From: Chrysemys picta bellii
Lineage: Eukaryota
DNA length: 64,000 nucleotides
Reading direction: 5' to 3'
Assembly (NCBI RefSeq): GCF_011386835.1
Contig: NC_088797.1
Coordinates: forward strand, 101,246,001 to 101,310,000
Shown: positions 3,499 through 58,749 of the stretch, piece by piece
Layout of the letters: each line of letters begins with the position of its first letter
Numbering within the stretch: the stretch's first letter is position 1
Notes under the pieces: model-generated
Seen by the model: only the letters and a program-made list of their open reading frames with translations
Told to the model about the DNA's origin: nothing
The model's database searches: none
Program-made: the position numbers and the translations under genes

Positions 3499-6400
3499 CT
3501 GAAAATAGCCAATGGCAAAGAGAACTGTGAACTTTATTCCAGTAGAATCTCTGTCTTCTAGAACTTAGCGTATTCAAAGATAGAATCAAGTCTGGAATAC
3601 ACTAGCTAACCATGATTTCAGCAAGAAGTTTGTGAAGAACTTTATGAGAAGTTGGGCCTTTTGGGGTAGGGGGAAATGAACTGCACTGCTGATCAATTTA
3701 GCGTAAGATTTTTTTGGCAACATACGCAGAGGGATATTGATATTCTGACATACAGCAGCATTCCTCATACCTTCAAAGCAGAGCACCCTGCAGGCAAACT
3801 TGACTACTCTGTACAAAAACAGAATTACTGAAAATGCTGTGTGGCATTTTAGCTGCACAAGATTCTGAGAGGGATTTGCACAACTAGAGCAGAAAAAGAA
3901 AGCTAGCCCCTAAAGGATCTGGGTCCTGGTTACCTAGAGATCATCTCTCTGCTTAATGTGTGCCGAGATCATTTGAGATTAGAGCAGTGTTATCTTAAAT
4001 TAGTTTAATCCAAAGGGGTCTGCACTTTGTAGACATGAGATGAAATCCTGGTCCCACTAAAGTCAATCTGTGGACTTTCAGGTCAGTCTCTTCCTAAGGA
4101 GCACAGGCAAATCAAACCTCAGCCTGCTGCATAACAGAACAGAGCACTATCAGGCCATTCCCCTAATGTAGGTTTTAATCTTCCATCCACTTTCTACTCT
4201 TTGAGACCAGCTGAACACACAAACTGAAACAGTGTAAGGTTCCTGGGTAGAAGGACTAAGAGCATTTCATTGTCTGAAGCCAGCAGTACTTTTAATTTAG
4301 AAAATTTCATAATATTCAGCATAATCTACAGCAATTATATTGCTATGTAATGTGCTTTTAAAATGTCATTTAGTTCTAAGAAATCAACTATATGGGTGAC
4401 AGTATAATTTTAGTTGTGTTTATTTTAGTTCGACAGTTTAGGGCAGGGCTGAGTTGGACTCTAGCCATACTGAAAGTTTACTGAATTTCTCAAGCCTACT
4501 TTTTATTTACAAAAATCTCTAAGTGAAATAAGAGTCAGTCCCTCCCTGCTTGCCTGTGATAAAAAGCAGGAAGCATGAATAAAGTGTTATGCAGGCATTT
4601 GGAGTTTTTATATATTAAGATGGATAAGTAGATTCTACAGGAAAAAAATAATTGAGGAAGTTATACCTCAATTTTTACAGTCTGTAAAATGAGAGTGCCT
4701 TTAAAACAAAGCAAGCAACTATTGGTTGTAACCATTAAAGGGGACCTGCAAATTCTGTTTAAATAAGTGAGTTTGTGCTTTTTGTTTTGTTTTGTTTCTT
4801 TTTGAAGTACATGGAAAGCAAGAATGCTTTTTTATTTAAAAAAAAAAGGGGGGGGGGGAATCTTGCCCTACATATTTTTACTTTAGGAATATCAAGAATG
4901 TCAAGTCTGATCATCCTTGTTTTTTCTCAAGTAGGATTTCTTGGAAGCTTCAGACCAGTTTATTGTGAGCTTTCACACACTTTAATTGAATAGGTGAAAT
5001 ACTGAAACATTAACAAAGACATCCTTTTAATCTAGTGTTCATTAGACTTGGGAGTTAAATAGGTGTTATCATAAAACACACACAAAACCAACTTTGGGAG
5101 GTTTGTGTGTTTGTAACAACAACTAAGAATTTCTGGCTCTGGACAGCTTTCAGTCTCATCTCTCATAGTATCAATCTCAACGGTAATACAGTCACTTGTG
5201 GCAGTTTTACACTGGCATTTTTCTTTACATCTCCCACTGTTGCACTGGCATTGGTGCATTCCCACTTGAGGTAGCAATAGTGGGACTGTTAGTGTAGACC
5301 AGCTGCTGGTATTTTTCACCATCATCTAGTTTAGCCCAGTTCTGCCCTTTAGCTCCAGAGGGACTGAGTGTAGAATATCTGCCACAAGTGGATTAAAGCA
5401 GAAATTTGAAGATAACAAAATTCACAGCCTTTCTGAATGGAAAGTGACACTGGGAGGATGTTTGGAGGGGAGGAGAGAGGGTCAGAGGAAATAGTGTGAG
5501 TAATTGGCAAAAATGAGAAACAACTGGATGAATCCAAGAGATGTATGGAAGCCATTAACTCCCATCTTGTCTTTCGCCGGCAATTTTGCTCGTTTTCCCT
5601 GAGCTGTTATAACCATTTAGCTGTTAGAAATTAGCTGTGAGAAGACCCGCTATTTACACTTTTTGAAAAGTTTGAATGAGACAAGGCTCTGATCTGTAGT
5701 TCCTGCAGACTCTCAAAGCGATATTCTGCAAGGCTATTAACTCACCCACAGTTTGTGGGTGACAAAAACCTCCTCCCAAGTACTTTAAAATGCTTTGAAG
5801 GATGAGTGGGAATTTTTAGCTGGCCTGAAGCCACTTGTGTGAACAAGGATAGGAACTGGGGATAGCTAACCTAGATGACCCCCGGATTCCTGCAAAACCC
5901 TCAACGAGCATCTCTCCCAATTTTCTGCCAGCTGGTCCCAGTACTATTGTCTCCTTCACATGGCATCAGTCCTGTCCACAAGAGAATAGGAAACAATGTA
6001 TTGAACCAACACATAGCACTTCCCTTCCCACTGATAACACTGTGTACACATTGTTCTCCACAATTTCCCTTCCTACTGCTGTGACTGGCAAGAGCAGAAA
6101 TTGATCTGAGGGGTTAGGTCAGCAGAAGAAGGGAGAAATGGAGGGGCAATCTCCCCGCCCAAACCTTCACCGTTGGGAAACCGTATTTCACCCTCCCCTT
6201 CCTTCTGAAGATATGCACATGGACTTCAGTTGGGTTCCTTAGAGACTGGGATATACAGGGCCACATTTTGCCTCAGATCAAAGGGGTAATCAAATCAAGT
6301 ATACCAGGTACATGGCAGTTTTATGACTGATATGGCATGTCATCAATTTCTGTGCCATAGAAACCTTCTCTCAACAATTGTTTGAGGCCACAGTCTCACA

Positions 6401-7500
6401 GCACTGTATTATGAATTGAATTAGAAGAGTGATTTGAAGGGGCTGTGGGGAAGGAATGGATTTCTGTCTTATAGCTGCATCCAAACTATAGTCATTAATG
6501 TCATCCTTAGCTGGAATGTGTGTGTGTCTGAAGTGTAAATGAGCCATACGAGAATGAATTGACTCTGCAGAAAGAGGAATTTCCTATGGAAATATAAAGC
6601 AGGCTTCTTTAATAATCTCATGGCAACAGCTGTTTTACACTGTGACATGAAACCTCTATTCTAGTACTAGAAAGGACAGAGCCAAGAACTCCCTTTATCT
6701 ATTTTAATTACTTCACATCAAAACAGAGGTGGATTAGCACTGACAGTGCTTATTAAAATTTACAGGCTGCACTGCCCGTTGGCGCCTCCACGTCTCAACT
6801 TTAATTCCTCCCATCCAACAAACCAAATAAAGTTGTGGTTTTCCAGACTCTTCAGGGTTAACAGTTTTCCTAGCCAGCAATCAGAAAGAGGCAGGGTAGG
6901 TGATTTCTCAGTTGACTTCTTCTGCCTGTTTCACACTGATCCATCCTCCTCCTTGACTTATAACTTTTGCTGCCTGCCTTTTTCAAGTACCCTGCCCCCC
7001 CACACCCCGTGCTAGCCCCATCTATGTTTCTCAGCTCCTCTGTTATGCCTCAGATCGTCTAATAATTTTGTTCAGCTCCTGTCACTCATCTACCTACACC
7101 CTGACCTACCTGCTACATCAGCCATAATATCACAACTCCTCAGGACAGACCCAGGCTTGTGTTCTTTATTCCCCCGTGTCTGTCTCAGAAGCTGAAGCCA
7201 GAGTCTCTCAGCTACTGTGCTATTTACCTTAGGCCTTCTGTTTGTCAGACCCAGAAGCCTCCCACCAATGTGTTTCTCAGCATCTTCATGACCCTGGGCC
7301 TGTATTTCTCAGTTCTCCTGTTGTGTCTCAGGACTTCCTCAGCATCTTCTTTCTGACTCCTCCAACCACAATTTTCAGAGTCTTTAATCCTCCATTCTGG
7401 AGATTTTAATAGTCATCATCATCACCTAGACCCTTAATACACAGTCCCTTGATGATTTTCTTACAAGAAACTAATGCATGTATTACAGCTGAGGTTTTAG

Positions 7501-7881
7501 ACATAGTTGCCAACTTTCATGTGGTAAACAAGCATCCCAACTTTCACAATAAGCCAAAAATCAAGCTAATCCCATTTCAAAACAAGGCCAAAACAAGCCA
7601 ATCCCTAAGAACCCAACACTCTATGTGACTAGCCCTCTGGTGTGCAGTCTGCGACTGTGGTGGGCCTGCTGTGCACCCCCAACTCTCTCCCCACCTTGCC
7701 CCTCCTTGTCCCCCCTTATCCCTGCTTGCCCCCCCTTTGCCCCGATCAAAAAAAGAAGATACAAGCCAAACAAGAAACAAGCTACAAGCCAAAAACTAGC
7801 CAACAAGCCACTCACAAGCCAATTAAGCCAAAAACAATCCCAATTTCTGCATTTTTTCGTTTGTGGGTTTGGCATGTCTGG
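7501..7881. mobile_element. Probable hAT MITE; partial second copy of the same family at about 20175-20255
   Basis: Left end CATAGTTGCCAAC, right end TTTGGCATGTCTG. The first ~80 bp (CAACTTTCATGTGGTAAA...AAGCTAATCCCATTTCAAAAC) recur at 20175-20255. Confidence 0.6.
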
Positions 7882-8455
7882 TCTTAGAAGTGTTCACTAT
7901 GCTAATCAGGATTAGGGTATAAGAAAGAGGGATCTTTATTAGGTAGGCTACCCATTCTCTTTAAACACTGAAAATAAAGTCAGCAAGGATAATGCAGGCA
8001 TGAGGAGTTCTTCAGGTAAAGGGAAATATTTAACTAAGACTGGTTGTATATGGTCTTATCAGAGTTCACATGTGGGCCTTCATCTTGCATATTCTTGCCT
8101 AGTACGTGGCAGGGAGCATAGAGTTGTACCCACTAGGCATGGTAGAGCACAAGGAGTGCAGTACTCCACCCTGGGTGGAAGTATACCAACTTCCTTACTC
8201 TCAAGAGGGCAGGGTGAAAAAGGGTGGAGAATGGACACACTATGGGTGTGTTTGAAGCAACATAGGTATGAGCAGGATTTTCCACATGTAAATAAGGGAA
8301 ACAGGTACACACTGCCTTATTTGGCTCAAGTAGCTTGGTGGCCACACAGCAGGGTCTTTTATTGCTGGATCAGATTCCCGTTTTGACTCATCACTTTTCA
8401 CACTGTGCCAATTGTCATCAGTCCACCTGCTCGTGCAGGACCAAGCCTGTACTGT

Positions 8456-8600
8456 AGGGACCTGATTCTCCATTGCCTCACACTTTCTGCCATTATTTGC
8501 ACCCCTGCACAGTGAATGCAAAGAAGAATGATAGCATTTTACACCCACTGTGTACATACGTGCAAACATCCACTTCAGACAGTGGAGAATCAGGCTCTAT
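8456..8600. mobile_element. Short MITE-like element with terminal inverted repeats
   Basis: GGGACCTGATTCTCCA ... TGGAGAATCAGGCTCT. Confidence 0.55.
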
Positions 8601-9639
8601 AACAATGTGAATAAAAATAATGGCCTAATCTTTCAATCCTGATGTAAGGGTCACAGAGTAGGGTATATTCACTATATGTATGAACATACATACAAAATAC
8701 CTGGTGGTCAGAGACTGCAGCAATGAGGGACACAAGATTTTATGCACATAATTTTACAGGTGCATTCATTTATCTGTCTCCCTATATAGGTCCTTATCTG
8801 TTTAGACATGGTCACAATATAAAATGCTTTTCAGTAAGACTGTTGCAACATACTCCTATATATTATTCCTATAGCCTCCAGACACCTCACAGGAGATTGA
8901 AAGTTCTCGGCCACATATCCCATCCTCTCCACTGTTCCCTTGGTTCTTACAGCCTACTTTGCTCTTCCCCAAGTCTGAATTGTATCTGCTGCTTGCTCGG
9001 CCTTTGCAGCTCTCTTCACTATTTCTCTGTGTGCCAAACACTATTTATTATCTGAATGGAGTGTTGTGGGCATCATCAGTCCCCAATACTGACTTCCTTC
9101 TCCTTGTGCCCCACATAGCCTATTGTAGTGGCGTCAAGCCTATGCACTGGCTTTCCTGGTATTATGAGGTCATGCAGGGTTAGGCATAAAAGGCTTTAAT
9201 TTGTTATGTACCATTCAAAAGCTTTTACAACTGAACAGGGAACAGATTGGGTTATAGAAAAAAAAAAAGAGAGCAGACAGCAATTTTTTCTTCTTCTGTA
9301 ACAAATAAGTTACCTCATTGAAAGAGGAATATTCAGAAGTTTCTTTGTGCAGAAAGTATAATTTCCAGTTCAGCTACTTTCAAAGTAAAATATAAGGGAA
9401 ATACACAGCACAAGAGCAGAACAGAATATGGAGGGAAATTATATTTTTCCCCAGGTGGGCAGGCATAAGACTTGTTGCAGATTGAATTGAGCGTAATGAC
9501 TCCTCGGCAGTAAATACCTCAGAGGTGAGCACATTAGAAATAAACATTTTCTCATCTGAATACAGCACCTCAAGAAACACAAAATCCTTTGAATTTTGCC
9601 ATTCAACATGGAAACCAGAGCCTAGGCATCACAGATATT

Positions 9640-34080: not shown

Positions 34081-36111
34081 AGACTTGTGAAATGTGCTCA
34101 TCACCTGCTATGTGTGCAGGTATGGTGAATAAGGTAGACATAGTTAGACTACACATAAATTAGCCTTACTTTCTGGCAGACAGCTCCTTAGAAATCCTCC
34201 ATCATCTTCATCTCAGGCAGAGACCAGTCCTTATAATAGATTCTGAAGGTCAACAAATTCAGGTTCCGTTGAACCAATGGGGAAGTGAGTGCCAGCATGG
34301 AAGGCCCTGCATTGGGAACATACAGGCTCAGATGTATTAGACTCCACAGCCACGTCTAAACTAGCAAAACAGGTCAAGTTAGCTAACACATTTTAAAGCA
34401 GGACTTTGCACCCCATATAGATGCATCATCGATGGAGTTTACACAGGGCAAAAGTGGTTTTTGAAACAATGTGTTAGCTGATTGGTGGTGGAGAGCCTAG
34501 AGTTAACCATGACCAGTTAACATTTTTTTAAGCACAGGTGTCTAGGTGCAAAGTCCTATTTAGCATTTTGTTTGTTAAATTGTGTTAGCTAACTTGTTTT
34601 AATATACAACCTATTTGCTGAGTCCGGACATGGCCTAAATCGGGGAGTGCCCTAGGCAGTCTCAGATTCTGGTAATCACATTCACAGTGTTCATTATTAT
34701 TGCTTGGTTTGCAGAAACTGGGGCGTATTTCAATTCATATTTGGCTCGTTGGCAAGCATCAGGCTCCCACATTTACACAAGGATCGCCTATTCATCAAGT
34801 GTCAACCCAGGATGACTCACTGTGATAAAAGATTTATGACACAATAGCTACTACTGATATCTGGCCATAAACATTTAGGCTGGGATTTTCAAAGGAGCCT
34901 GAGGCCCCAATCCTATGAACAGTTATGCCTCTTCTTAACTTTACTATCATGAATGATCCCATTGATTTCAGTGGGGACTACTCACAGTAGCAAAGTTAAA
35001 CACTTGCATAACTGTTTGCTGGATCAGGGCATGAGAGAGTCAGGTGCCCAATTCCCAGGGAATTTCAATGAGATATGAGCACCAATTTCTTTAGGCGCCT
35101 TTGAAAATCCCAGATTTAATATATTACAGATATAAATAAAATAACTGTCCATTACAAGAAAGCTGTGGAAAGGTTTGGGTGGCTCAAGCAGCAGCCACTG
35201 ACACAGCATAGCACAGATTAATAGTATCAAAGTAGTTCTTAGGCATTGGCACAATAGTTTGCTGTTAATTGCAACAAAGTGCATTAACCACCAGAGAAAA
35301 GCCCATTGAAATCAAATTGATGTATTGGTTCAGAGATGAATTAGCACTCAGATTTAGAATTAAAAAATAGTCCCATATATTAATGTGGAAGATATTTCTC
35401 TTTTTTCTCCTCACCTCAAATAGCTATATAATAAGCTCTTATGAGCTTAATAAGAAACCCCTGGTTGATTGTTCTGAATCTCCTGTATATAATCTTAAGG
35501 AAAATGGGTTGCTTTAATCCTAGATATATCAACTCAACCAGTAAACTTGGATTTGCCAGAGCTCCAGGAGAAGACTGTCTTTTTCCTTAGCAACCATTTT
35601 AATCCAGGTCCCCTGCTTGTCTTAATTTTGGCTGTAGTGTGGAAATGTACTGCTTTCAAATATTTTTCAGTCCCTTCCTGCTCTTAGAAGAGTTTAATAT
35701 CCTCTCAATACATGGGTTTAACTCCAGTTATCAGAAAACCAGAGTGTGCAATTGAAGGGCAAATGCACCTCTTAAGAGAAGGGAGCATCTACAGCAGGGG
35801 TGTCAAACTCAATTGCACAGGGGGCCAAAACTCAAAACTCGCGGGCCGAACAGTATAACCATTTATTTAACAGACTAAATATTTATGTTTTTTAACCATT
35901 AATATGAACCAAAATACAGGATATCATTCCAAAATAAATACATTTCAACTTAAAATATTTTGCTCTTCATAAAAAAATATCCTGTCAATACAATACATTC
36001 AAAATCTGTACATGCTGGAATATTAAAAAATCTGAAAATATAAATAAAAAATTGAATTTAAAGCAAAAGTATAATCATAACAAATCATAACATTCCATTT
36101 TCTTGTCCTAT

Positions 36112-37920
36112 TTAGTCAGAGCCTGATACTTGGAGTCTTTTCTTTGCAACAAGTTCGTTTATGTTTGGGGTTAGGTTCTGTGTTGTGAAGATTCTCAGGA
36201 TCGATTGCAGGTGTTCATCAGTGAGGCGACTCCTGTGTGACGTTTTGTTAATTTTCATCACAGAGAACAGCTGCTCGCACAGATATGTGCTGCCAAACAT
36301 GGACAGGATTCGAGCCGCATGTTGGCGGAGCTGCGGCATCGCTTCAGGAATGAAGCGAGTGAACTGTGCTGGCCCCGCAGTGTCGTACTTTGCCTTCAGT
36401 GTCCCGTTACATTGCAGTTCTATCAGCTCCATCTGCATTTCTACAGGTGCGGTTTCCACATCGACTGCAAATGGGTTGCGAAGCAGCTCGAAGTTACTTT
36501 TCTGTGCCTCAAAGTCACTGAAGCGCCGTGCGAACTCAGTGCGCAGCGCGCTGAGTTTTTCAGCAAAGGTGGCATTTGGGAAAACTGTGGCACTTTCTTG
36601 GTTCCGTATTACTTGGCAACAGGGAAAGTGAGACAAGTTGCATTGGTGCATTTGTGTCTCCCATAAGCGCAGCTTCACTTGAAATGCCTTCACTGCATCA
36701 TGCATATCGGTTATTATGTGCTCCCGTCCCTGGAGTTGAAGGTTTAAAGCGCTAAGATGCGACGTTATGTCAGCCAGGAACGCCAACTCACATTTCCACT
36801 TTTCATCCCGCAGAACTGTGCAGTCTTTCCCCTTACTGTCCATGAACTGGCAGATTTCCTCTCGCAGCTCAAAGTGTCTTTTGAGAACTTTTCCCCGACT
36901 TAGCCACCGGACCTCCGTATGATATGGCATATCGCCAAACTCGCTATCTATTTCCCGCAGAAAAGACTGGAATTGGCGGTGATTTAAACCGTGGGCTCTG
37001 ATAAAGTTGACGGTTTGTGTTACAGTGTTCATCACATGATCCATTTTTAGGACTTTAGCACTCAGCGATTCCTGGTGTATGATGCAGTGATACACTGTCA
37101 ACTCACCGGCACAGTTCTCCTCCCGCATCTTTGAGCGCATCCTTCCCACCAGTCCATTTTTTTCACCACACATAGCAGGTGCGCCATCTGTTGTAAGTCC
37201 AACGAGTTTTTCCCACGGCAGTTTCATGTCGGTTACACTTTGAAATACATTTCCAAAGATGTCTTCTCCTTTCGTTGTCCCGTGCATCGATTTAATGTCC
37301 AGTATTTCCTCTGTTACGCACAAATTGGAATCCACACCACGGATAAATATCGCCAGCTGTGCAGTGTCAGTCGCGTCAGTAGTTTCATCCACGGCAAGGG
37401 AGTATGCAACAAAATCTTTTGCTCTTTCAATCAACTGTGTTTTCCAATCAGTCGCCATCTCACAAACCCGATTAGCAACAGTGTTTCTGCTGAGGCTTAC
37501 ATTTGCAAACGCTCGCGTTTTATCTGGACAAAGGACGTCGCACACTTTCATCATACAATTCTTTACGAATTCCCCCTCGGTAAACGGCCGTCCTGATTTG
37601 GCGATCTCTTCGGCCACAATGAAACTTGCTTTCACAGCAGCTTCACTTTGTGATTTTGCTTTGGTGAAAAACGTCTGCTGGGATGTCAAATTCTTCTTCA
37701 ACTCCTCTACCTTTTGTAGCTTCTGTCCTGCGCTCAGGTTTTTGAATTTGTTCTCATGTTTCGTCTCGTAGTGCCGTCTTAGGTTATACTCCTTCATTAC
37801 AGCGATATTACTCCCGCAAAGGAGACACACTGGTTTACCTGCAATTTCAGTAAACATATACTCATTCTCCCACCGGCTTTGAAAGCCTCGGTTTTCAGAA
37901 TCAATTTTTCTCTTGGCCAT
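36112..37920 (-). CDS. hAT transposase, 602 aa, uninterrupted (automated pipelines tend to label such proteins GTF2IRD2-like)
   Basis: BED-like finger CLLC...YNLRRHYETKH. Catalytic VD178ETTD, TTD245GAPAM and YLCE549QLFS, plus CIIH (CxxH) and VRWLS motifs. C-terminal hAT dimerisation region RSRLTDEHL. Confidence 0.97.
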   Translation of the reverse strand: MAKRKIDSENRGFQSRWENEYMFTEIAGKPVCLLCGSNIAVMKEYNLRRHYETKHENKFKNLSAGQKLQKVEELKKNLTSQQTFFTKAKSQSEAAVKASFIVAEEIAKSGRPFTEGEFVKNCMMKVCDVLCPDKTRAFANVSLSRNTVANRVCEMATDWKTQLIERAKDFVAYSLAVDETTDATDTAQLAIFIRGVDSNLCVTEEILDIKSMHGTTKGEDIFGNVFQSVTDMKLPWEKLVGLTTDGAPAMCGEKNGLVGRMRSKMREENCAGELTVYHCIIHQESLSAKVLKMDHVMNTVTQTVNFIRAHGLNHRQFQSFLREIDSEFGDMPYHTEVRWLSRGKVLKRHFELREEICQFMDSKGKDCTVLRDEKWKCELAFLADITSHLSALNLQLQGREHIITDMHDAVKAFQVKLRLWETQMHQCNLSHFPCCQVIRNQESATVFPNATFAEKLSALRTEFARRFSDFEAQKSNFELLRNPFAVDVETAPVEMQMELIELQCNGTLKAKYDTAGPAQFTRFIPEAMPQLRQHAARILSMFGSTYLCEQLFSVMKINKTSHRSRLTDEHLQSILRIFTTQNLTPNINELVAKKRLQVSGSD

Positions 37921-38011
37921 TGTTGGGGTCTAGCTTTGATTTGATATTAGCGTTGTATACATCAACAGACCGCGAACTTGAACCGCGGCTTGCCGTTGGC
38001 GGCAATTGCAC

Positions 38012-38031
38012 TGCATCATGGGATTTGTAGT
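38012..38031 (-). promoter_or_regulatory. ZNF143/THAP11-like motif upstream of the transposase (also 56511-56530 in copy 2)
   Basis: Minus strand ACTACAAATCCCATGATGCA, ending ~90 bp upstream of the ATG, matches the recalled ACTACAnnTCCCAnnATGC consensus. Confidence 0.55.
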
Positions 38032-38749
38032 GTGTGTTATTGGGGCGTCATATCACAGGGCCATTAAAAACAGATATATAAAACGATTTCGCGGGCCGGA
38101 TATAATTGTATGGCGGGCCGGATGTGGCCCGCGGGCCTTGAGTTTGACACATGTGATCTACAGTATATCTCAGGCTGGAAGCAGAGTTGTTAAGGAAAGT
38201 ACAGTCCTGCTGGCAGGCTCCAAACTAGGTATTATGCATTGATATATGGCAGAAATGAGCAGCCCAAAGCCATGTATCATGCTAAAGATTGTGCAGTGAG
38301 GGTTTCCATTTTGTCCTTCCTCCAGTAACAAATATGAACATTAAACAAAAGAATAAAATAAATCTAACAGGAAAAAATGATTTGCATTTTTAAAGTTTCA
38401 TGCTTAGTAGATTTGTTCTTCTAAAAGTTCAAACAAATCTCTTGAAGGTAGGTCCTTGCTAACACAAAGGCAGTTCTTTGCCCTTCTACAAAGCTGTGTA
38501 ACGTTTTACTTTCTGTGCTAGACGTGCTAAGCAATCCATAACTGGTTAACACTAAAGGGAAACATTCAAGGGTAGCTGGGCTAAAATTAGAGCTAGCTTT
38601 GTTCTAAGAGCAGGGGTACGTAGTCACATGTATGTCAGTATCCTTTCACTCTATCTCAGTGAAATTCACCCCTGTGCAGATGGCCAGCACACAGTTGATG
38701 AACAAGTCACACATAAGCCCTATTTAGCCCTCCTAAATTCATGGAGTAT

Positions 38750-54170: not shown

Positions 54171-54293
54171 TATACAAATAAAATATAGTTGGGCAAATGT
54201 TGAAATAGCCAGTGTATAACCCTGACTCATTCTGTGAGAAATCATGTTGTGTGTGAAGCTGCAAGAATTTAAGTACATTATGAACATCTATAT

Positions 54294-56654
54294 CAGGGGT
54301 GTCAAACTCAATTGCACAGGGGGCCAAAACTCAAAACTCGCGGGCCGAACAGTATAACCATTTATTTAACAGACTAAATATTTATGTTTTTTAACCATTA
54401 ATATGAACCAAAATACAGGATATCATTCCAAAATAAATACATTTCAACTTAAAATATTTTGCTCTTCATAAAAAAATATCCTGTCAATACAATACATTCA
54501 AAATCTGTACATGCTGGAATATTAAAAAATCTGAAAATATAAATAAAAAATTGAATTTAAAGCAAAAGTATAATCATAACAAATCATAACATTCCATTTT
54601 CTTGTCCTATTTAGTCAGAGCCTGATACTTGGAGTCTTTTCTTTGCAACAAGTTCGTTTATGTTTGGGGTTAGGTTCTGTGTTGTGAAGATTCTCAGGAT
54701 CGATTGCAGGTGTTCATCAGTGAGGCGACTCCTGTGTGACGTTTTGTTAATTTTCATCACAGAGAACAGCTGCTCGCACAGATATGTGCTGCCAAACATG
54801 GACAGGATTCGAGCCGCATGTTGGCGGAGCTGCGGCATCGCTTCAGGAATGAAGCGAGTGAACTGTGCTGGCCCCGCAGTGTCGTACTTTGCCTTCAGTG
54901 TCCCGTTACATTGCAGTTCTATCAGCTCCATCTGCATTTCTACAGGTGCGGTTTCCACATCGACTGCAAATGGGTTGCGAAGCAGCTCGAAGTTACTTTT
55001 CTGTGCCTCAAAGTCACTGAAGCGCCGTGCGAACTCAGTGCGCAGCGCGCTGAGTTTTTCAGCAAAGGTGGCATTTGGGAAAACTGTGGCACTTTCTTGG
55101 TTCCGTATTACTTGGCAACAGGGAAAGTGAGACAAGTTGCATTGGTGCATTTGTGTCTCCCATAAGCGCAGCTTCACTTGAAATGCCTTCACTGCATCAT
55201 GCATATCGGTTATTATGTGCTCCCGTCCCTGGAGTTGAAGGTTTAAAGCGCTAAGATGCGACGTTATGTCAGCCAGGAACGCCAACTCACATTTCCACTT
55301 TTCATCCCGCAGAACTGTGCAGTCTTTCCCCTTACTGTCCATGAACTGGCAGATTTCCTCTCGCAGCTCAAAGTGTCTTTTGAGAACTTTTCCCCGACTT
55401 AGCCACCGGACCTCCGTATGATATGGCATATCGCCAAACTCGCTATCTATTTCCCGCAGAAAAGACTGGAATTGGCGGTGATTTAAACCGTGGGCTCTGA
55501 TAAAGTTGACGGTTTGTGTTACAGTGTTCATCACATGATCCATTTTTAGGACTTTAGCACTCAGCGATTCCTGGTGTATGATGCAGTGATACACTGTCAA
55601 CTCACCGGCACAGTTCTCCTCCCGCATCTTTGAGCGCATCCTTCCCACCAGTCCATTTTTTTCACCACACATAGCAGGTGCGCCATCTGTTGTAAGTCCA
55701 ACGAGTTTTTCCCACGGCAGTTTCATGTCGGTTACACTTTGAAATACATTTCCAAAGATGTCTTCTCCTTTCGTTGTCCCGTGCATCGATTTAATGTCCA
55801 GTATTTCCTCTGTTACGCACAAATTGGAATCCACACCACGGATAAATATCGCCAGCTGTGCAGTGTCAGTCGCGTCAGTAGTTTCATCCACGGCAAGGGA
55901 GTATGCAACAAAATCTTTTGCTCTTTCAATCAACTGTGTTTTCCAATCAGTCGCCATCTCACAAACCCGATTAGCAACAGTGTTTCTGCTGAGGCTTACA
56001 TTTGCAAACGCTCGCGTTTTATCTGGACAAAGGACGTCGCACACTTTCATCATACAATTCTTTACGAATTCCCCCTCGGTAAACGGCCGTCCTGATTTGG
56101 CGATCTCTTCGGCCACAATGAAACTTGCTTTCACAGCAGCTTCACTTTGTGATTTTGCTTTGGTGAAAAACGTCTGCTGGGATGTCAAATTCTTCTTCAA
56201 CTCCTCTACCTTTTGTAGCTTCTGTCCTGCGCTCAGGTTTTTGAATTTGTTCTCATGTTTCGTCTCGTAGTGCCGTCTTAGGTTATACTCCTTCATTACA
56301 GCGATATTACTCCCGCAAAGGAGACACACTGGTTTACCTGCAATTTCAGTAAACATATACTCATTCTCCCACCGGCTTTGAAAGCCTCGGTTTTCAGAAT
56401 CAATTTTTCTCTTGGCCATTGTTGGGGTCTAGCTTTGATTTGATATTAGCGTTGTATACATCAACAGACCGCGAACTTGAACCGCGGCTTGCCGTTGGCG
56501 GCAATTGCACTGCATCATGGGATTTGTAGTGTGTGTTATTGGGGCGTCATATCACAGGGCCATTAAAAACAGATATATAAAACGATTTCGCGGGCCGGAT
56601 ATAATTGTATGGCGGGCCGGATGTGGCCCGCGGGCCTTGAGTTTGACACATGTG
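54294..56654 (-). mobile_element. Full-length autonomous hAT DNA transposon, copy 2, 2,361 bp
   Basis: Same TIRs and length as copy 1. Its own perfect 8-bp TSD ATCTATAT (54286-54293, 56655-56662). No differences from copy 1 seen in the stretches compared by eye. Confidence 0.98.
54611..56419 (-). CDS. hAT transposase, 602 aa, identical translation to 36112-37920
   Basis: ORF track gives the same 602-aa protein. All four overlapping antisense ORFs are also identical between the copies. Confidence 0.97.
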   Translation of the reverse strand: MAKRKIDSENRGFQSRWENEYMFTEIAGKPVCLLCGSNIAVMKEYNLRRHYETKHENKFKNLSAGQKLQKVEELKKNLTSQQTFFTKAKSQSEAAVKASFIVAEEIAKSGRPFTEGEFVKNCMMKVCDVLCPDKTRAFANVSLSRNTVANRVCEMATDWKTQLIERAKDFVAYSLAVDETTDATDTAQLAIFIRGVDSNLCVTEEILDIKSMHGTTKGEDIFGNVFQSVTDMKLPWEKLVGLTTDGAPAMCGEKNGLVGRMRSKMREENCAGELTVYHCIIHQESLSAKVLKMDHVMNTVTQTVNFIRAHGLNHRQFQSFLREIDSEFGDMPYHTEVRWLSRGKVLKRHFELREEICQFMDSKGKDCTVLRDEKWKCELAFLADITSHLSALNLQLQGREHIITDMHDAVKAFQVKLRLWETQMHQCNLSHFPCCQVIRNQESATVFPNATFAEKLSALRTEFARRFSDFEAQKSNFELLRNPFAVDVETAPVEMQMELIELQCNGTLKAKYDTAGPAQFTRFIPEAMPQLRQHAARILSMFGSTYLCEQLFSVMKINKTSHRSRLTDEHLQSILRIFTTQNLTPNINELVAKKRLQVSGSD

Positions 56655-58749
56655 ATCTATATCCTTTGAGATATTGATTCAATCCTGGCATTTATTGAAT
56701 GTCATCTTTGTAATAATCATAGTATTTTGTCCTTGCATGATGATTTTCATTCGTAGATCTCACAGCACTATACAACAGAGAGTAAACTTTATTATCCTCA
56801 TTTTACAGATGAAGAAACTGAGGTATAGAAGGTTAAAGTGATGTTTCCAATATCACCTAGGAGACTATGGTTCTATTCCAAAGTCCCAATGGAGTGACCT
56901 ATTCACTGGGGTAAGTATCTATGTCTTACCTAATTTGAGAGCTGTTACCTAAAACATTTTGTACTTCAAAGCCTATTTAAAAAGTGGGATGGGCCAATGT
57001 GATACAGTAGAGGTTCTTTGCCTTTCCCATCATGCTCAGCCCACACTATCTATACTGCCTCACTTAGAGGTGGCACTCACCAAGCAGGGTGGCTAAACTT
57101 GCATCTCCCATGGGAAGAAGCAACATGCTACCACCAGAAGCATAATTCAAAAAAGGTCAACAGTGACCATTAGTTTCTACAAGCTGATGGCTCTTTGATG
57201 GTGTTGGTGCTTAGAGTTGGATGTTCTTGGTCCAGATTCCAAGCATGCAGGAATTCATACCACAAGGCCTGAATAGGCATGAAGACTCAGCTAACTTTCT
57301 CACTAAGATGTCCCTCCAGGTCAGGGCTGAGACAGTGCTAGGGCAGTGGGGAGAAGAATGCTTGTTCTGTAGATAAATAGGAATCAGTCTCCAAGGCTGT
57401 CAGTCTGGTACTTTTCCCAATTGCTAATGTCACATTAAAATAGTAGCCGAGGTTTTTATGCCCTTCTGCACTTCCTGCAGTATTTCTGATTCTGATCTCA
57501 ACCCAAACCAGGAAACAACAACTCTCCTCACTGGCAAAGAAATGTAGTACTGGAGCACTCATTACATTTCCAGCCCAAAGGAATTGGGAAGTCTACGCCA
57601 AACTTTTTAAGCATGACCCTGCGCTAACGTTATTTATGTCCTGTTAAAATGGTTTAAAAAAACAGAATGGGAGTCAAGAGATCTGGGTTGGGTTCCCAGA
57701 ATTCACACCACAGGCTTACTGTGTGTCCTTGGGCAAATGACTTAAACCCTCCGGGTGAAATGTTGGCCCTCTTGAAGTCAGTGGCAAAACTCCCCTTGAC
57801 TTCAATAGAACCAGGATTTAACTGTCATGTTGACATTTCCCCATCTTTGAAACAGGAATATATTACCTCCCTCGTAGGAGTATTGTGAAGTTTCAGACAT
57901 TATAAAATACTGAAATCTTTGGATGAAAAGTTTTATGGGGGAGATTTTCAAAGGAACAAATAGCAGCTAGGTACCTAACTCCCACTGAAAGTCAGTGTAA
58001 GATAGTCATCTGATTTTGTGACTTTGAAAAATCTCCACTCTAGTTATTATTTTTCACTTTGGAAAGGCCAGAGATACATACAACATTGTAGTGTTAGTAA
58101 AATATGCTAAGTAAAAGTCCCTGTGCAAAGAGCATACAGTCCATAGGCACAAACTGATACAAATTAGAACAGAACAAAGGGAAACTTGGAGTGGAGAGTG
58201 GCTTTATAGACATGCTCAGTTTATTAGTAGATAACCATCACCGTCTCCACTAAAATATTTTGACTTTAAACTATGTACAAGGTTATGCTAACATTTTTAA
58301 TTAGCAGTTTGTTAATGAGGGATTTATGACCTCTATTAATAATTAGTTTATTACTTTACAGGAAATTATGCCTGATTTCTTTTCCTTTAAAAAAAAAAAA
58401 ATCCTGCTGAGCAATCATAGACAGTAATTCTTGCCAAGTCACCGTCTGATGGACTAAGAAGTGAATGATTTCCTTTGCAGAGTTAATTTAAGCTTATTAT
58501 TAAAAAATCAAGTGAAAAAGCAAGTCCTAGGCCAGCACACTGTAAGCCTGAGCTCTCACAATACAAGCTAAGCCTGTGTCTTGTTAGTGCTATGATTTTT
58601 GTTTGAATACATCTTTTAGGGGCCGATCAAAGCCCATTGATGCCAATGGCATTCTTTCCATAGACATCAATGTGTTTTGGATCAGCCCTTTAAATAAATT
58701 AAAGGGTTAGGGGCTGGCAAGCGATGGCTTATAGTGTGTTTTCATGAGT

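What the first reader, a model, noticed from the sequence alone, without database searches (positions are those of the whole stretch)
36112..37920. Transposase DNA looks foreign: possible recent horizontal transfer
The element is visibly rich in CpG (e.g. GCGCAGCGCG, TCGCGTC, CGCCGTGCG), while the flanks are CpG-depleted. It has therefore escaped methylation decay. From memory, the termini CAGGGGTGTCAAACTC / GGCCCGCGGGCCTTGAGTTTGACACATGTG resemble hAT ends common in teleost fish. This hAT group (SPIN, OC1) is known for repeated horizontal transfer among vertebrates. The donor is not established.
Basis: inference. Interest (0 to 1): 0.7.

Follow-up and report, generated by a model that had tools for sequence, protein, structure and literature searches.

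The report
Young hAT-6_XT transposon, transfer already published

Summary
The stated coordinates are an intact 602-aa transposase ORF inside a 2361-bp hAT transposon (35795-38155) with imperfect 18-bp terminal inverted repeats (TIRs) and a perfect 8-bp target-site duplication (TSD). CpG observed/expected is 0.88 in the element and 0.14-0.16 in the flanks. A second copy (54294-56654) is 100% identical, at another site with another TSD.

The horizontal-transfer reading is supported:
- A chromosome-level assembly of the fish Hoplias malabaricus holds a decayed copy that is 98.4% identical in DNA, untranslated region and end included (pS 0.017).
- Chrysemys picta and Trachemys scripta hold 99.7-99.8% identical copies at other sites.
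- The protein tree puts the turtle copies inside a fish clade, apart from the snake copies.

This is the Repbase family hAT-6_XT. [quoted passage not shown] Other follow-ups of this scan reached the same family on other pieces of this genome.

The link to SPIN/OC1 holds only at the level of the Buster branch of hAT.

Small additions here: the Hoplias copy, a full-length intact copy in the newer Chrysemys assembly, and a probable local hop within this window. The donor remains unknown.

The parts
35795..38155 (-). Copy 1 of the autonomous hAT-6_XT transposon (2361 bp)
   Evidence: Bounded by TIRs and an 8-bp TSD. 99.79% identical to a Chrysemys copy and 99.70% to a Trachemys copy.
35787..35794 (.). 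Target-site duplication ATCTACAG, left copy
   Evidence: Read directly from the sequence. Repeated at 38156-38163.
38156..38163 (.). Target-site duplication ATCTACAG, right copy
   Evidence: Read directly from the sequence. TA at positions 4-5, as in the four other insertion sites examined.
35795..35812 (+). Terminal inverted repeat at the 3' end of the transposase gene (CAGGGGTGTCAAACTCAA)
   Evidence: 15 of 18 bases match the other end; 13 bases are perfect (pair I10).
38138..38155 (-). Terminal inverted repeat at the 5' end of the transposase gene (CACATGTGTCAAACTCAA on the minus strand)
36112..37920 (-). Intact transposase ORF, 602 aa, no intron. It has an N-terminal C2H2 zinc finger (C32, C35, H50, H55) and an RNase-H-like catalytic core with an inserted helical domain. 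Proposed DDE residues are D178, D245 and E549.
   Evidence: ORF. (Pfam zf-C2H2_12 at 36.2 bits; DUF4371 and Dimer_Tnp_hAT below cutoff). (these residues invariant or at least 90% conserved). (model pLDDT 83.9; the twelve best PDB matches are all Hermes transposase, best E 2.4e-10). The DDE assignment is inferred from motifs.
38091..38137 (.). Subterminal GGCCCGC/GCGGGCC motifs, four at this end and one at 35841-35847; likely transposase-binding sites
   Evidence: 10 matches in the window, all inside the two copies, against 1.2 expected. The binding role is inferred.
54294..56654 (-). Copy 2, 100% identical to copy 1 over all 2361 bp, same orientation, 16.1 kb of host DNA between the two copies
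   Evidence: The flanks are unrelated, so this is a separate insertion.
54286..54293 (.). Target-site duplication ATCTATAT of copy 2, repeated at 56655-56662
54611..56419 (-). Intact 602-aa transposase ORF of copy 2

Best explanation
The stretch is the transposase gene of a complete autonomous DNA transposon: hAT superfamily, Buster branch, Repbase family hAT-6_XT. The element moves by cut and paste. Its transposase binds the 18-bp terminal inverted repeats and probably the subterminal GGCCCGC motifs. It cuts the element out with an RNase-H-like DDE active site and reinserts it, making an 8-bp target duplication with TA in the middle. The family entered this turtle lineage recently from outside, by horizontal transfer from or through aquatic animals, so its CpG sites have not yet decayed in the methylated host genome. 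The two identical copies 18.5 kb apart (start to start) share a private substitution (W159). They most likely arose by a very recent short-range hop, so the element was active within roughly the last million years and may still be. Shown here: the anatomy, the identity of the copies, the near-identity to a fish copy, the fold, and the tree. Inferred: which residues are catalytic, that the GGCCCGC motifs bind transposase, the age, present activity, and the route of transfer.
For: Anatomy: TIRs, a perfect 8-bp TSD and an intact 602-aa ORF. The predicted structure matches only Hermes transposase at high confidence. The zinc-finger and D178/D245/E549 positions are conserved across 37 relatives.

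Youth: CpG o/e is 0.88 against about 0.15 in the flanks. The second copy has 0 differences in 2361 bp and its own TSD.

Transfer: the Hoplias malabaricus chromosome CM080106.1 carries a copy that is 98.37% identical over 1958 bp, including the 3' untranslated part and the TIR. It lies about 4.3 kb from a fish NLR gene. Within the ORF pS is 0.017. All 11 CpG-to-TpG/CpA changes are on the fish side. Chrysemys and Trachemys copies are 99.8% and 99.7% identical at different loci with their own TSDs. In the tree, window + Chrysemys + Trachemys + Hoplias form a fully supported clade inside a fish/metagenome clade. Snake proteins, at 67-74% identity, sit elsewhere.

Published match: PMC11008031 describes hAT-6_XT in Malaclemys, Trachemys, Chrysemys, Dermatemys, Sternotherus, Mesoclemmys, five fishes and Xenopus. 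It reports the family absent from the other turtles, the crocodilians and the birds that it screened. Its supplementary turtle sequences and its transposase read as the same element, and its Mesoclemmys copy is 2361 bp with G+C 0.4422, as here.

Buster branch: TA at positions 4-5 of all five target sites fits the nnnTAnnn consensus cited in PMC3517528 and PMC3499496.
Against: Exact identity of two copies could in principle be produced by assembly polishing. The comparison with the published sequences was made by reading machine-read PDF text, not by a computed alignment. Only one, truncated, Hoplias copy was seen, so neither the direction of transfer nor the donor can be inferred. The patchy distribution among turtles rests on the paper's screen and on annotated proteins, not on a DNA search of my own.
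Confidence: 0.9

Rival explanations
1. The element is an old resident of turtles, inherited vertically. A continuously active lineage under purifying selection keeps the copies looking young.
For: Turtle genomes evolve slowly, and the paper itself notes that low divergence could partly reflect this. The transposase is intact.
Against: A fish copy is 98.4% identical, and 99% in the 317-bp untranslated end that protein selection cannot preserve. Turtles and teleosts diverged more than 400 million years ago (general knowledge), so their neutral sites are saturated. CpG o/e of 0.88 is hard to keep over long residence in a genome whose background is 0.2. No other turtle or archosaur protein appears among the best hits. 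The paper found the family absent from most turtles screened, including Emys and Terrapene.
Confidence: 0.03
2. Contamination or a chimeric assembly: the CpG-rich block is foreign DNA stitched into a turtle contig.
For: There is an abrupt composition change at the borders.
Against: The borders are exact transposon ends, each with a perfect 8-bp duplication of host sequence, and this occurs twice in the window at different sites. The same element sits at other sites in chromosome-scale assemblies of two other turtle species, each with its own TSD.
Confidence: 0.02
3. It is a host gene, the GTF2IRD2A-like protein that NCBI's annotation names, and not a mobile element.
For: The closest database proteins carry that name. 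GTF2IRD2 is a domesticated hAT-derived gene.
Against: It has TIRs, TSDs and no introns. There are two identical copies within 18.5 kb, different loci in different species, and non-coding ends conserved together with the ORF. These are properties of a transposon, so the database name is an automatic label by similarity.
Confidence: 0.02
4. On direction: a Neotropical characiform fish lineage such as Hoplias, or a parasite shared with it, gave the element to turtles, instead of the North American darter suggested in the paper.
For: Hoplias is the only non-turtle above 90% protein identity in two searches. Its copy is older than the turtle copies: it is 5'-truncated, has two deletions, and carries 11 CpG decays on the fish side and none on the turtle side. 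One turtle host in the paper, Mesoclemmys tuberculata, is South American (general knowledge). Read by eye, the paper's Etheostoma sequence differs from the window element more than the Hoplias copy does (machine-read text, not computed).
Against: Only one decayed fish copy was seen. Emydid hosts such as Chrysemys and Malaclemys are North American. The protein collection covers only annotated or assembled samples. An unknown third party could have given the element to both, as the paper proposes.
Confidence: 0.2

Closest known systems
hAT-6_XT as described by Hassan, Galbraith and Adelson, Mob DNA 2024 (PMC11008031)
   Same: Same element. The ends are the same (CAGGGGTGTCAAAC...). Its Mesoclemmys copy has the same length (2361 bp) and G+C (0.4422). 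The transposase text is nearly the same as the Malaclemys protein. The paper's Chrysemys and Trachemys hosts match the 99.7-99.8% copies found here. The conclusion of recent horizontal transfer with an unknown donor is also the same.
   Different: The paper found no full-length copy in the older Chrysemys assembly; the newer one (CM062320.1) has an intact 2361-bp copy with a TSD. Hoplias malabaricus is not among its hosts. The window's two copies carry W159 and E204 where the Malaclemys protein reads L and Q (machine-read text); at position 159 the Chrysemys, Trachemys and Hoplias copies also encode L.
SPIN and OC1 (horizontally transferred hAT elements of tetrapods)
   Same: Both are hAT elements with 8-bp TSDs, known for repeated horizontal transfer. 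SPIN belongs to the Buster branch, to which the target-site pattern and the GTF2IRD2-like similarity also assign this element.
   Different: They are different families. The paper treats SPIN separately and notes that turtles lacked evidence of transfer in the SPIN study. No SPIN or OC1 sequence was available for comparison here.
[quoted passage not shown]
   Same: Same overall fold: an RNase-H-like core interrupted by a helical insertion domain. Foldseek E is 2.4e-10, probability 1.0, target-normalised TM up to 0.61.
   Different: Only 12-15% sequence identity. Neither a sequence nor a profile search reached it. Hermes is in the Ac branch, with a different target-site consensus.
Naturally active vertebrate hAT elements such as Tol2 of medaka
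   Same: Intact autonomous copies, nearly identical to one another, and a suspected recent arrival in the host.
   Different: Tol2 is in the Ac branch, and its activity has been shown by experiment (general knowledge). No activity test exists for this element, to my knowledge.

Membership tests
hAT superfamily | 8-bp target-site duplication | tested here: met
   ATCTACAG and ATCTATAT in the window, AGTTAGAG in Chrysemys, GCATACAG in Trachemys.
hAT superfamily | Short terminal inverted repeats | tested here: met
   18-bp ends, 15 of 18 matching, 13 perfect.
hAT superfamily | Transposase with the Hermes-like fold and a DDE triad | tested here: met
   The top 12 PDB matches are all Hermes. D178, D245 and E549 are conserved, but their equivalence to the Hermes residues is inferred from motifs, not from a residue-level superposition. 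Pfam Dimer_Tnp_hAT scores 19.7 bits, just under its cutoff of 21.4.
Buster branch of hAT | Target-site consensus nnnTAnnn | tested here: met
   TA at positions 4-5 in 5 of 5 sites. The consensus is taken from PMC3517528 and PMC3499496. Five sites are few.
Buster branch of hAT | Transposase related to Buster/TFII-I (GTF2IRD2)-like proteins | tested here: met
   The relatives carry the precomputed Pfam families FAM200-GTF2IRD2-like and FAM200-ZBED5 RNase-like.
hAT-6_XT (as used in PMC11008031) | At least 75% identity over at least 90% of hAT-6_XT_MTT, with TIRs and TSDs | tested here: met
   The supplementary turtle sequences and the Malaclemys transposase read as the same element, with the same length and G+C as the Mesoclemmys copy. 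Copies in two of the paper's host species are 99.7-99.8% identical. The comparison with the supplement was by reading machine-read text, not by a computed alignment.
SPIN / OC1 | Sequence identity to the SPIN or OC1 consensus and their specific ends | not tested
No reference sequence was available in the tools.
Horizontal transposon transfer (standard three criteria) | Similarity between distant hosts far above that of neutral host DNA | tested here: met
   98.4% DNA identity, pS 0.017, turtle against teleost. Host dS was not computed and is taken as saturated from general knowledge.
Horizontal transposon transfer (standard three criteria) | Gene tree incongruent with host tree | tested here: met
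   The turtle copies group with a characiform fish inside a fish clade; snake copies lie elsewhere.
Horizontal transposon transfer (standard three criteria) | Patchy distribution among close relatives of the host | tested here: inconclusive
   No other turtle or archosaur appears among the best 120 hits of two protein searches, but unannotated copies would be missed. The paper's DNA screen found the family in 7 of about 20 turtle assemblies and in none of the birds listed in the part of its table read here.

The most novel reading that the evidence does not exclude
The element is transposing now in this turtle: two identical sister copies 18.5 kb apart would be a fresh local hop. That would make it one of the very few naturally active autonomous DNA transposons in an amniote. 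Its nearest non-turtle relative lies in the Neotropical fish Hoplias malabaricus, a host not reported so far, which hints at a South American freshwater route for at least one of the turtle invasions.
Probability: 0.35. Interest if true: 0.45.

Novelty: already known. Interest (0 to 1): 0.25.

Why it matters
Horizontal transfer of DNA transposons into amniotes is uncommon. An intact, possibly still mobile hAT element in a slowly evolving turtle genome is useful as a marker of recent insertions and as a candidate gene-transfer tool. The main point, however, has been in print since 2024. What this window adds is small. It supplies a closer fish relative, which narrows the donor question. It shows that Chrysemys picta does hold a full-length copy. 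It gives a tidy example of a probable short-range hop.

Tried and rejected
- Single-sequence and profile searches of PDB sequences did not reach Hermes. Only the fold search did.
- The bacterial-type promoter and terminator scan has no bearing on a vertebrate element and was ignored.
- Rfam found nothing in the window.
- Ten other ORFs of 128 aa or more in the window had no Pfam match, so no host gene was available to name the species or to compute a host dS.
- A search with the C-terminal half of the protein found no further fragment above 90% identity.
- The organism behind the Logan contig from run SRR33529794 could not be identified.
- The published pairwise identities are in a figure that is not held, so Hoplias could not be ranked numerically against the paper's fishes.
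- A composite transposon made of the two copies was considered and rejected, because the outer flanks do not share a duplication.

Full report
**What is there**

The coordinates given (36112-37920) are exactly one uninterrupted ORF of 602 codons on the minus strand. CAGGGGTGTCAAACTC begins at 35795, and the other quoted string ends at 38155. The element therefore spans 35795-38155, which is 2361 bp. Its ends are 18-bp inverted repeats that match at 15 positions, 13 of them in a perfect run. The host octamer ATCTACAG is duplicated on both sides.

**CpG content**

CpG observed/expected is 0.88 in the element and 0.84 in the ORF. It is 0.16 and 0.14 in the two 5-kb flanks and 0.21 in the rest of the window. 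In 1-kb bins, the only stretches of the 64 kb that reach 0.6 are this element and one other place.

**A second copy**

That other place is a second copy at 54294-56654. It has the same length, the same orientation and 0 differences in 2361 bp. It has unrelated flanks and its own duplication, ATCTATAT. No other fragment of the element is present in the window. The two copies share a substitution (G at element position 711, giving W159) that the Chrysemys, Trachemys and Hoplias copies lack. They are therefore sister copies.

Two identical sister copies 18.5 kb apart fit the short-range reinsertion that hAT elements are known for (general knowledge). With no difference in 2361 bp, and assuming a neutral rate of 0.5-1 x 10^-9 per site per year, the two copies separated less than about 0.6-1.3 million years ago. 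The bound is tighter if the fast decay of the 101 CpG sites is counted. This age is an inference, not a measurement.

**The protein**

Pfam finds the SPIN-DOC type C2H2 zinc finger above its cutoff. It finds DUF4371 and the hAT C-terminal dimerisation domain just below their cutoffs. Sequence and profile searches of PDB chains did not reach any transposase. A structure predicted from an alignment of 37 relatives (mean pLDDT 83.9) matches Hermes transposase in its twelve best PDB hits. The best E-value is 2.4e-10, with probability 1.0. The next hits are at E of 4e-3 or worse.

C32, C35, H50 and H55 (zinc finger), D178 and D245 (ends of core strands), E549 (in the CEQLFS motif), the HCxxH motif at 278-282 and W339 are invariant or at least 90% conserved. 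I take D178/D245/E549 as the catalytic triad by analogy with the Hermes motifs. That assignment is inferred.

The motif GGCCCGC occurs five times per copy, always near the ends, and nowhere else in the window. It is a plausible transposase-binding repeat, but this is untested.

**Relatives**

The best protein hit (99% identity) is a Chrysemys picta bellii protein. Its cluster also holds two Trachemys scripta proteins. Next comes a Hoplias malabaricus protein at 93%, then fishes and metagenome contigs at 75-83%. Snakes are at 67-74%, a bryozoan at 69% and an octopus at 63%. No other turtle, crocodilian or bird is among the 120 best hits. A second search with the C-terminal half found no further fragment above 90%.

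At the DNA level:
- The Chrysemys copy (CM062320.1) is 99.79% identical over all 2361 bp. It is intact and has its own duplication, AGTTAGAG.
- The Trachemys copy (CM023065.1) is 99.70% identical, with duplication GCATACAG. Its longest ORF is 581 aa and begins at M22, so the start of the ORF appears to be disrupted.
- The Hoplias copy (CM080106.1) is 98.37% identical over 1958 bp.

**The fish copy**

The Hoplias copy lies on an 86-Mb chromosome, about 4.3 kb from a typical fish NLR gene with FISNA, NACHT and PRY/SPRY domains. It lacks the first 403 bp and has a 3-bp and a 5-bp deletion. It differs from the window copy by 24 substitutions. Eleven of these are CpG to TpG/CpA changes on the fish side, and none are on the turtle side. 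It is therefore an older, decaying resident of the fish genome and not turtle contamination.

Within the ORF there are 6 synonymous and 15 non-synonymous differences, giving pS 0.017 and pN/pS about 0.7. This is the pattern of neutral decay after insertion. The 317-bp untranslated end differs at only 3 positions, so selection on the protein cannot explain the similarity. Turtles and teleosts separated more than 400 million years ago (general knowledge), and their neutral sites are saturated.

**The tree**

A maximum-likelihood tree of 50 proteins puts window, Chrysemys, Trachemys and Hoplias in one fully supported clade. That clade sits inside a fully supported clade with turbot, Leuresthes and metagenome sequences. 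Snake proteins form a separate clade with a loach and a catfish. High similarity across distant hosts and an incongruent tree are therefore both shown here. The patchy distribution is supported only indirectly.

**Already published**

A literature search found Hassan, Galbraith and Adelson, Mob DNA 2024 (PMC11008031). They describe the Repbase family hAT-6_XT in Malaclemys terrapin, Trachemys scripta, Chrysemys picta, Dermatemys mawii, Sternotherus odoratus and Mesoclemmys tuberculata. They also find it in five fishes and in Xenopus tropicalis. They report it absent from the other turtles, the crocodilians and the birds that they screened. They infer independent recent transfers from an unknown, perhaps parasitic, donor.

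Their supplementary turtle sequences and the Malaclemys transposase read as the same element as the window's, allowing for machine-reading errors. Their Mesoclemmys copy is 2361 bp with G+C 0.4422, the same as here. No other paper in the library names this family. Two earlier follow-ups of this scan on other pieces of the same genome reached the same identification. I confirmed the identification independently.

**Classification**

All five insertion sites examined have TA at positions 4-5 of the duplication. This is the nnnTAnnn consensus of the Buster branch of hAT, the branch that also holds SPIN (PMC3517528 and PMC3499496). No SPIN or OC1 sequence was compared.

**What is new here, modestly**

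- Hoplias malabaricus is not among the published hosts, and no paper in the library links it to this transfer. It is the only non-turtle above 90% protein identity in the collection searched.
- The paper found no full-length copy in the older Chrysemys assembly. The newer assembly has an intact one.
- The window shows a probable local hop.

**Limits**

Expression, insertion polymorphism and distribution by raw reads were therefore not tested.
- The species of the window was not determined.
- Direction and donor of the transfer remain open.

Noticed in passing
L004:1-1203 (Logan contig of run SRR33529794): An internally deleted derivative of the same element. Element positions 303-332 are joined to 1179-2349, with 96.8% identity over 1181 bp and 15 mismatches to the window copy. 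It shares the A at position 2102 with the Hoplias copy. The organism is unknown, so this may be a further host lineage.
   Followed up: partly
L003:7025-9385 (Trachemys scripta CM023065.1): In this copy the longest ORF has 581 aa and begins at M22, so the start of the ORF appears to be disrupted. NCBI's 613-aa model of the gene spans 4001-9069 of the locus, far more than one copy of the element, presumably to bridge the break. Such transposase genes are labelled GTF2IRD2A-like by automatic annotation.
   Followed up: partly
window:37445 (codon 159 of the ORF) and window:55944 in copy 2: Both window copies encode W159, where the Chrysemys, Trachemys, Hoplias and published Malaclemys copies encode L, which is also the majority residue among 37 relatives. 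Whether this affects activity is unknown.
   Followed up: partly
tree, related family at about 56% identity: A bat (Phyllostomus) protein groups with a frog (Eleutherodactylus) protein inside a frog and fish clade. A bryozoan and octopuses carry proteins 63-69% identical to the window's. This wider Buster-type group may hold further cross-phylum transfers.
   Followed up: no
window:338-600: A C-rich tandem array, 50-bp unit, about 4 copies with 96% matches, at the start of the window.
   Followed up: no
window:62000-64000: G+C rises to 0.55-0.68 while CpG o/e is only 0.17-0.33. Overlapping ORFs of 124-205 aa on both strands have no Pfam match. Nature unknown.
   Followed up: partly
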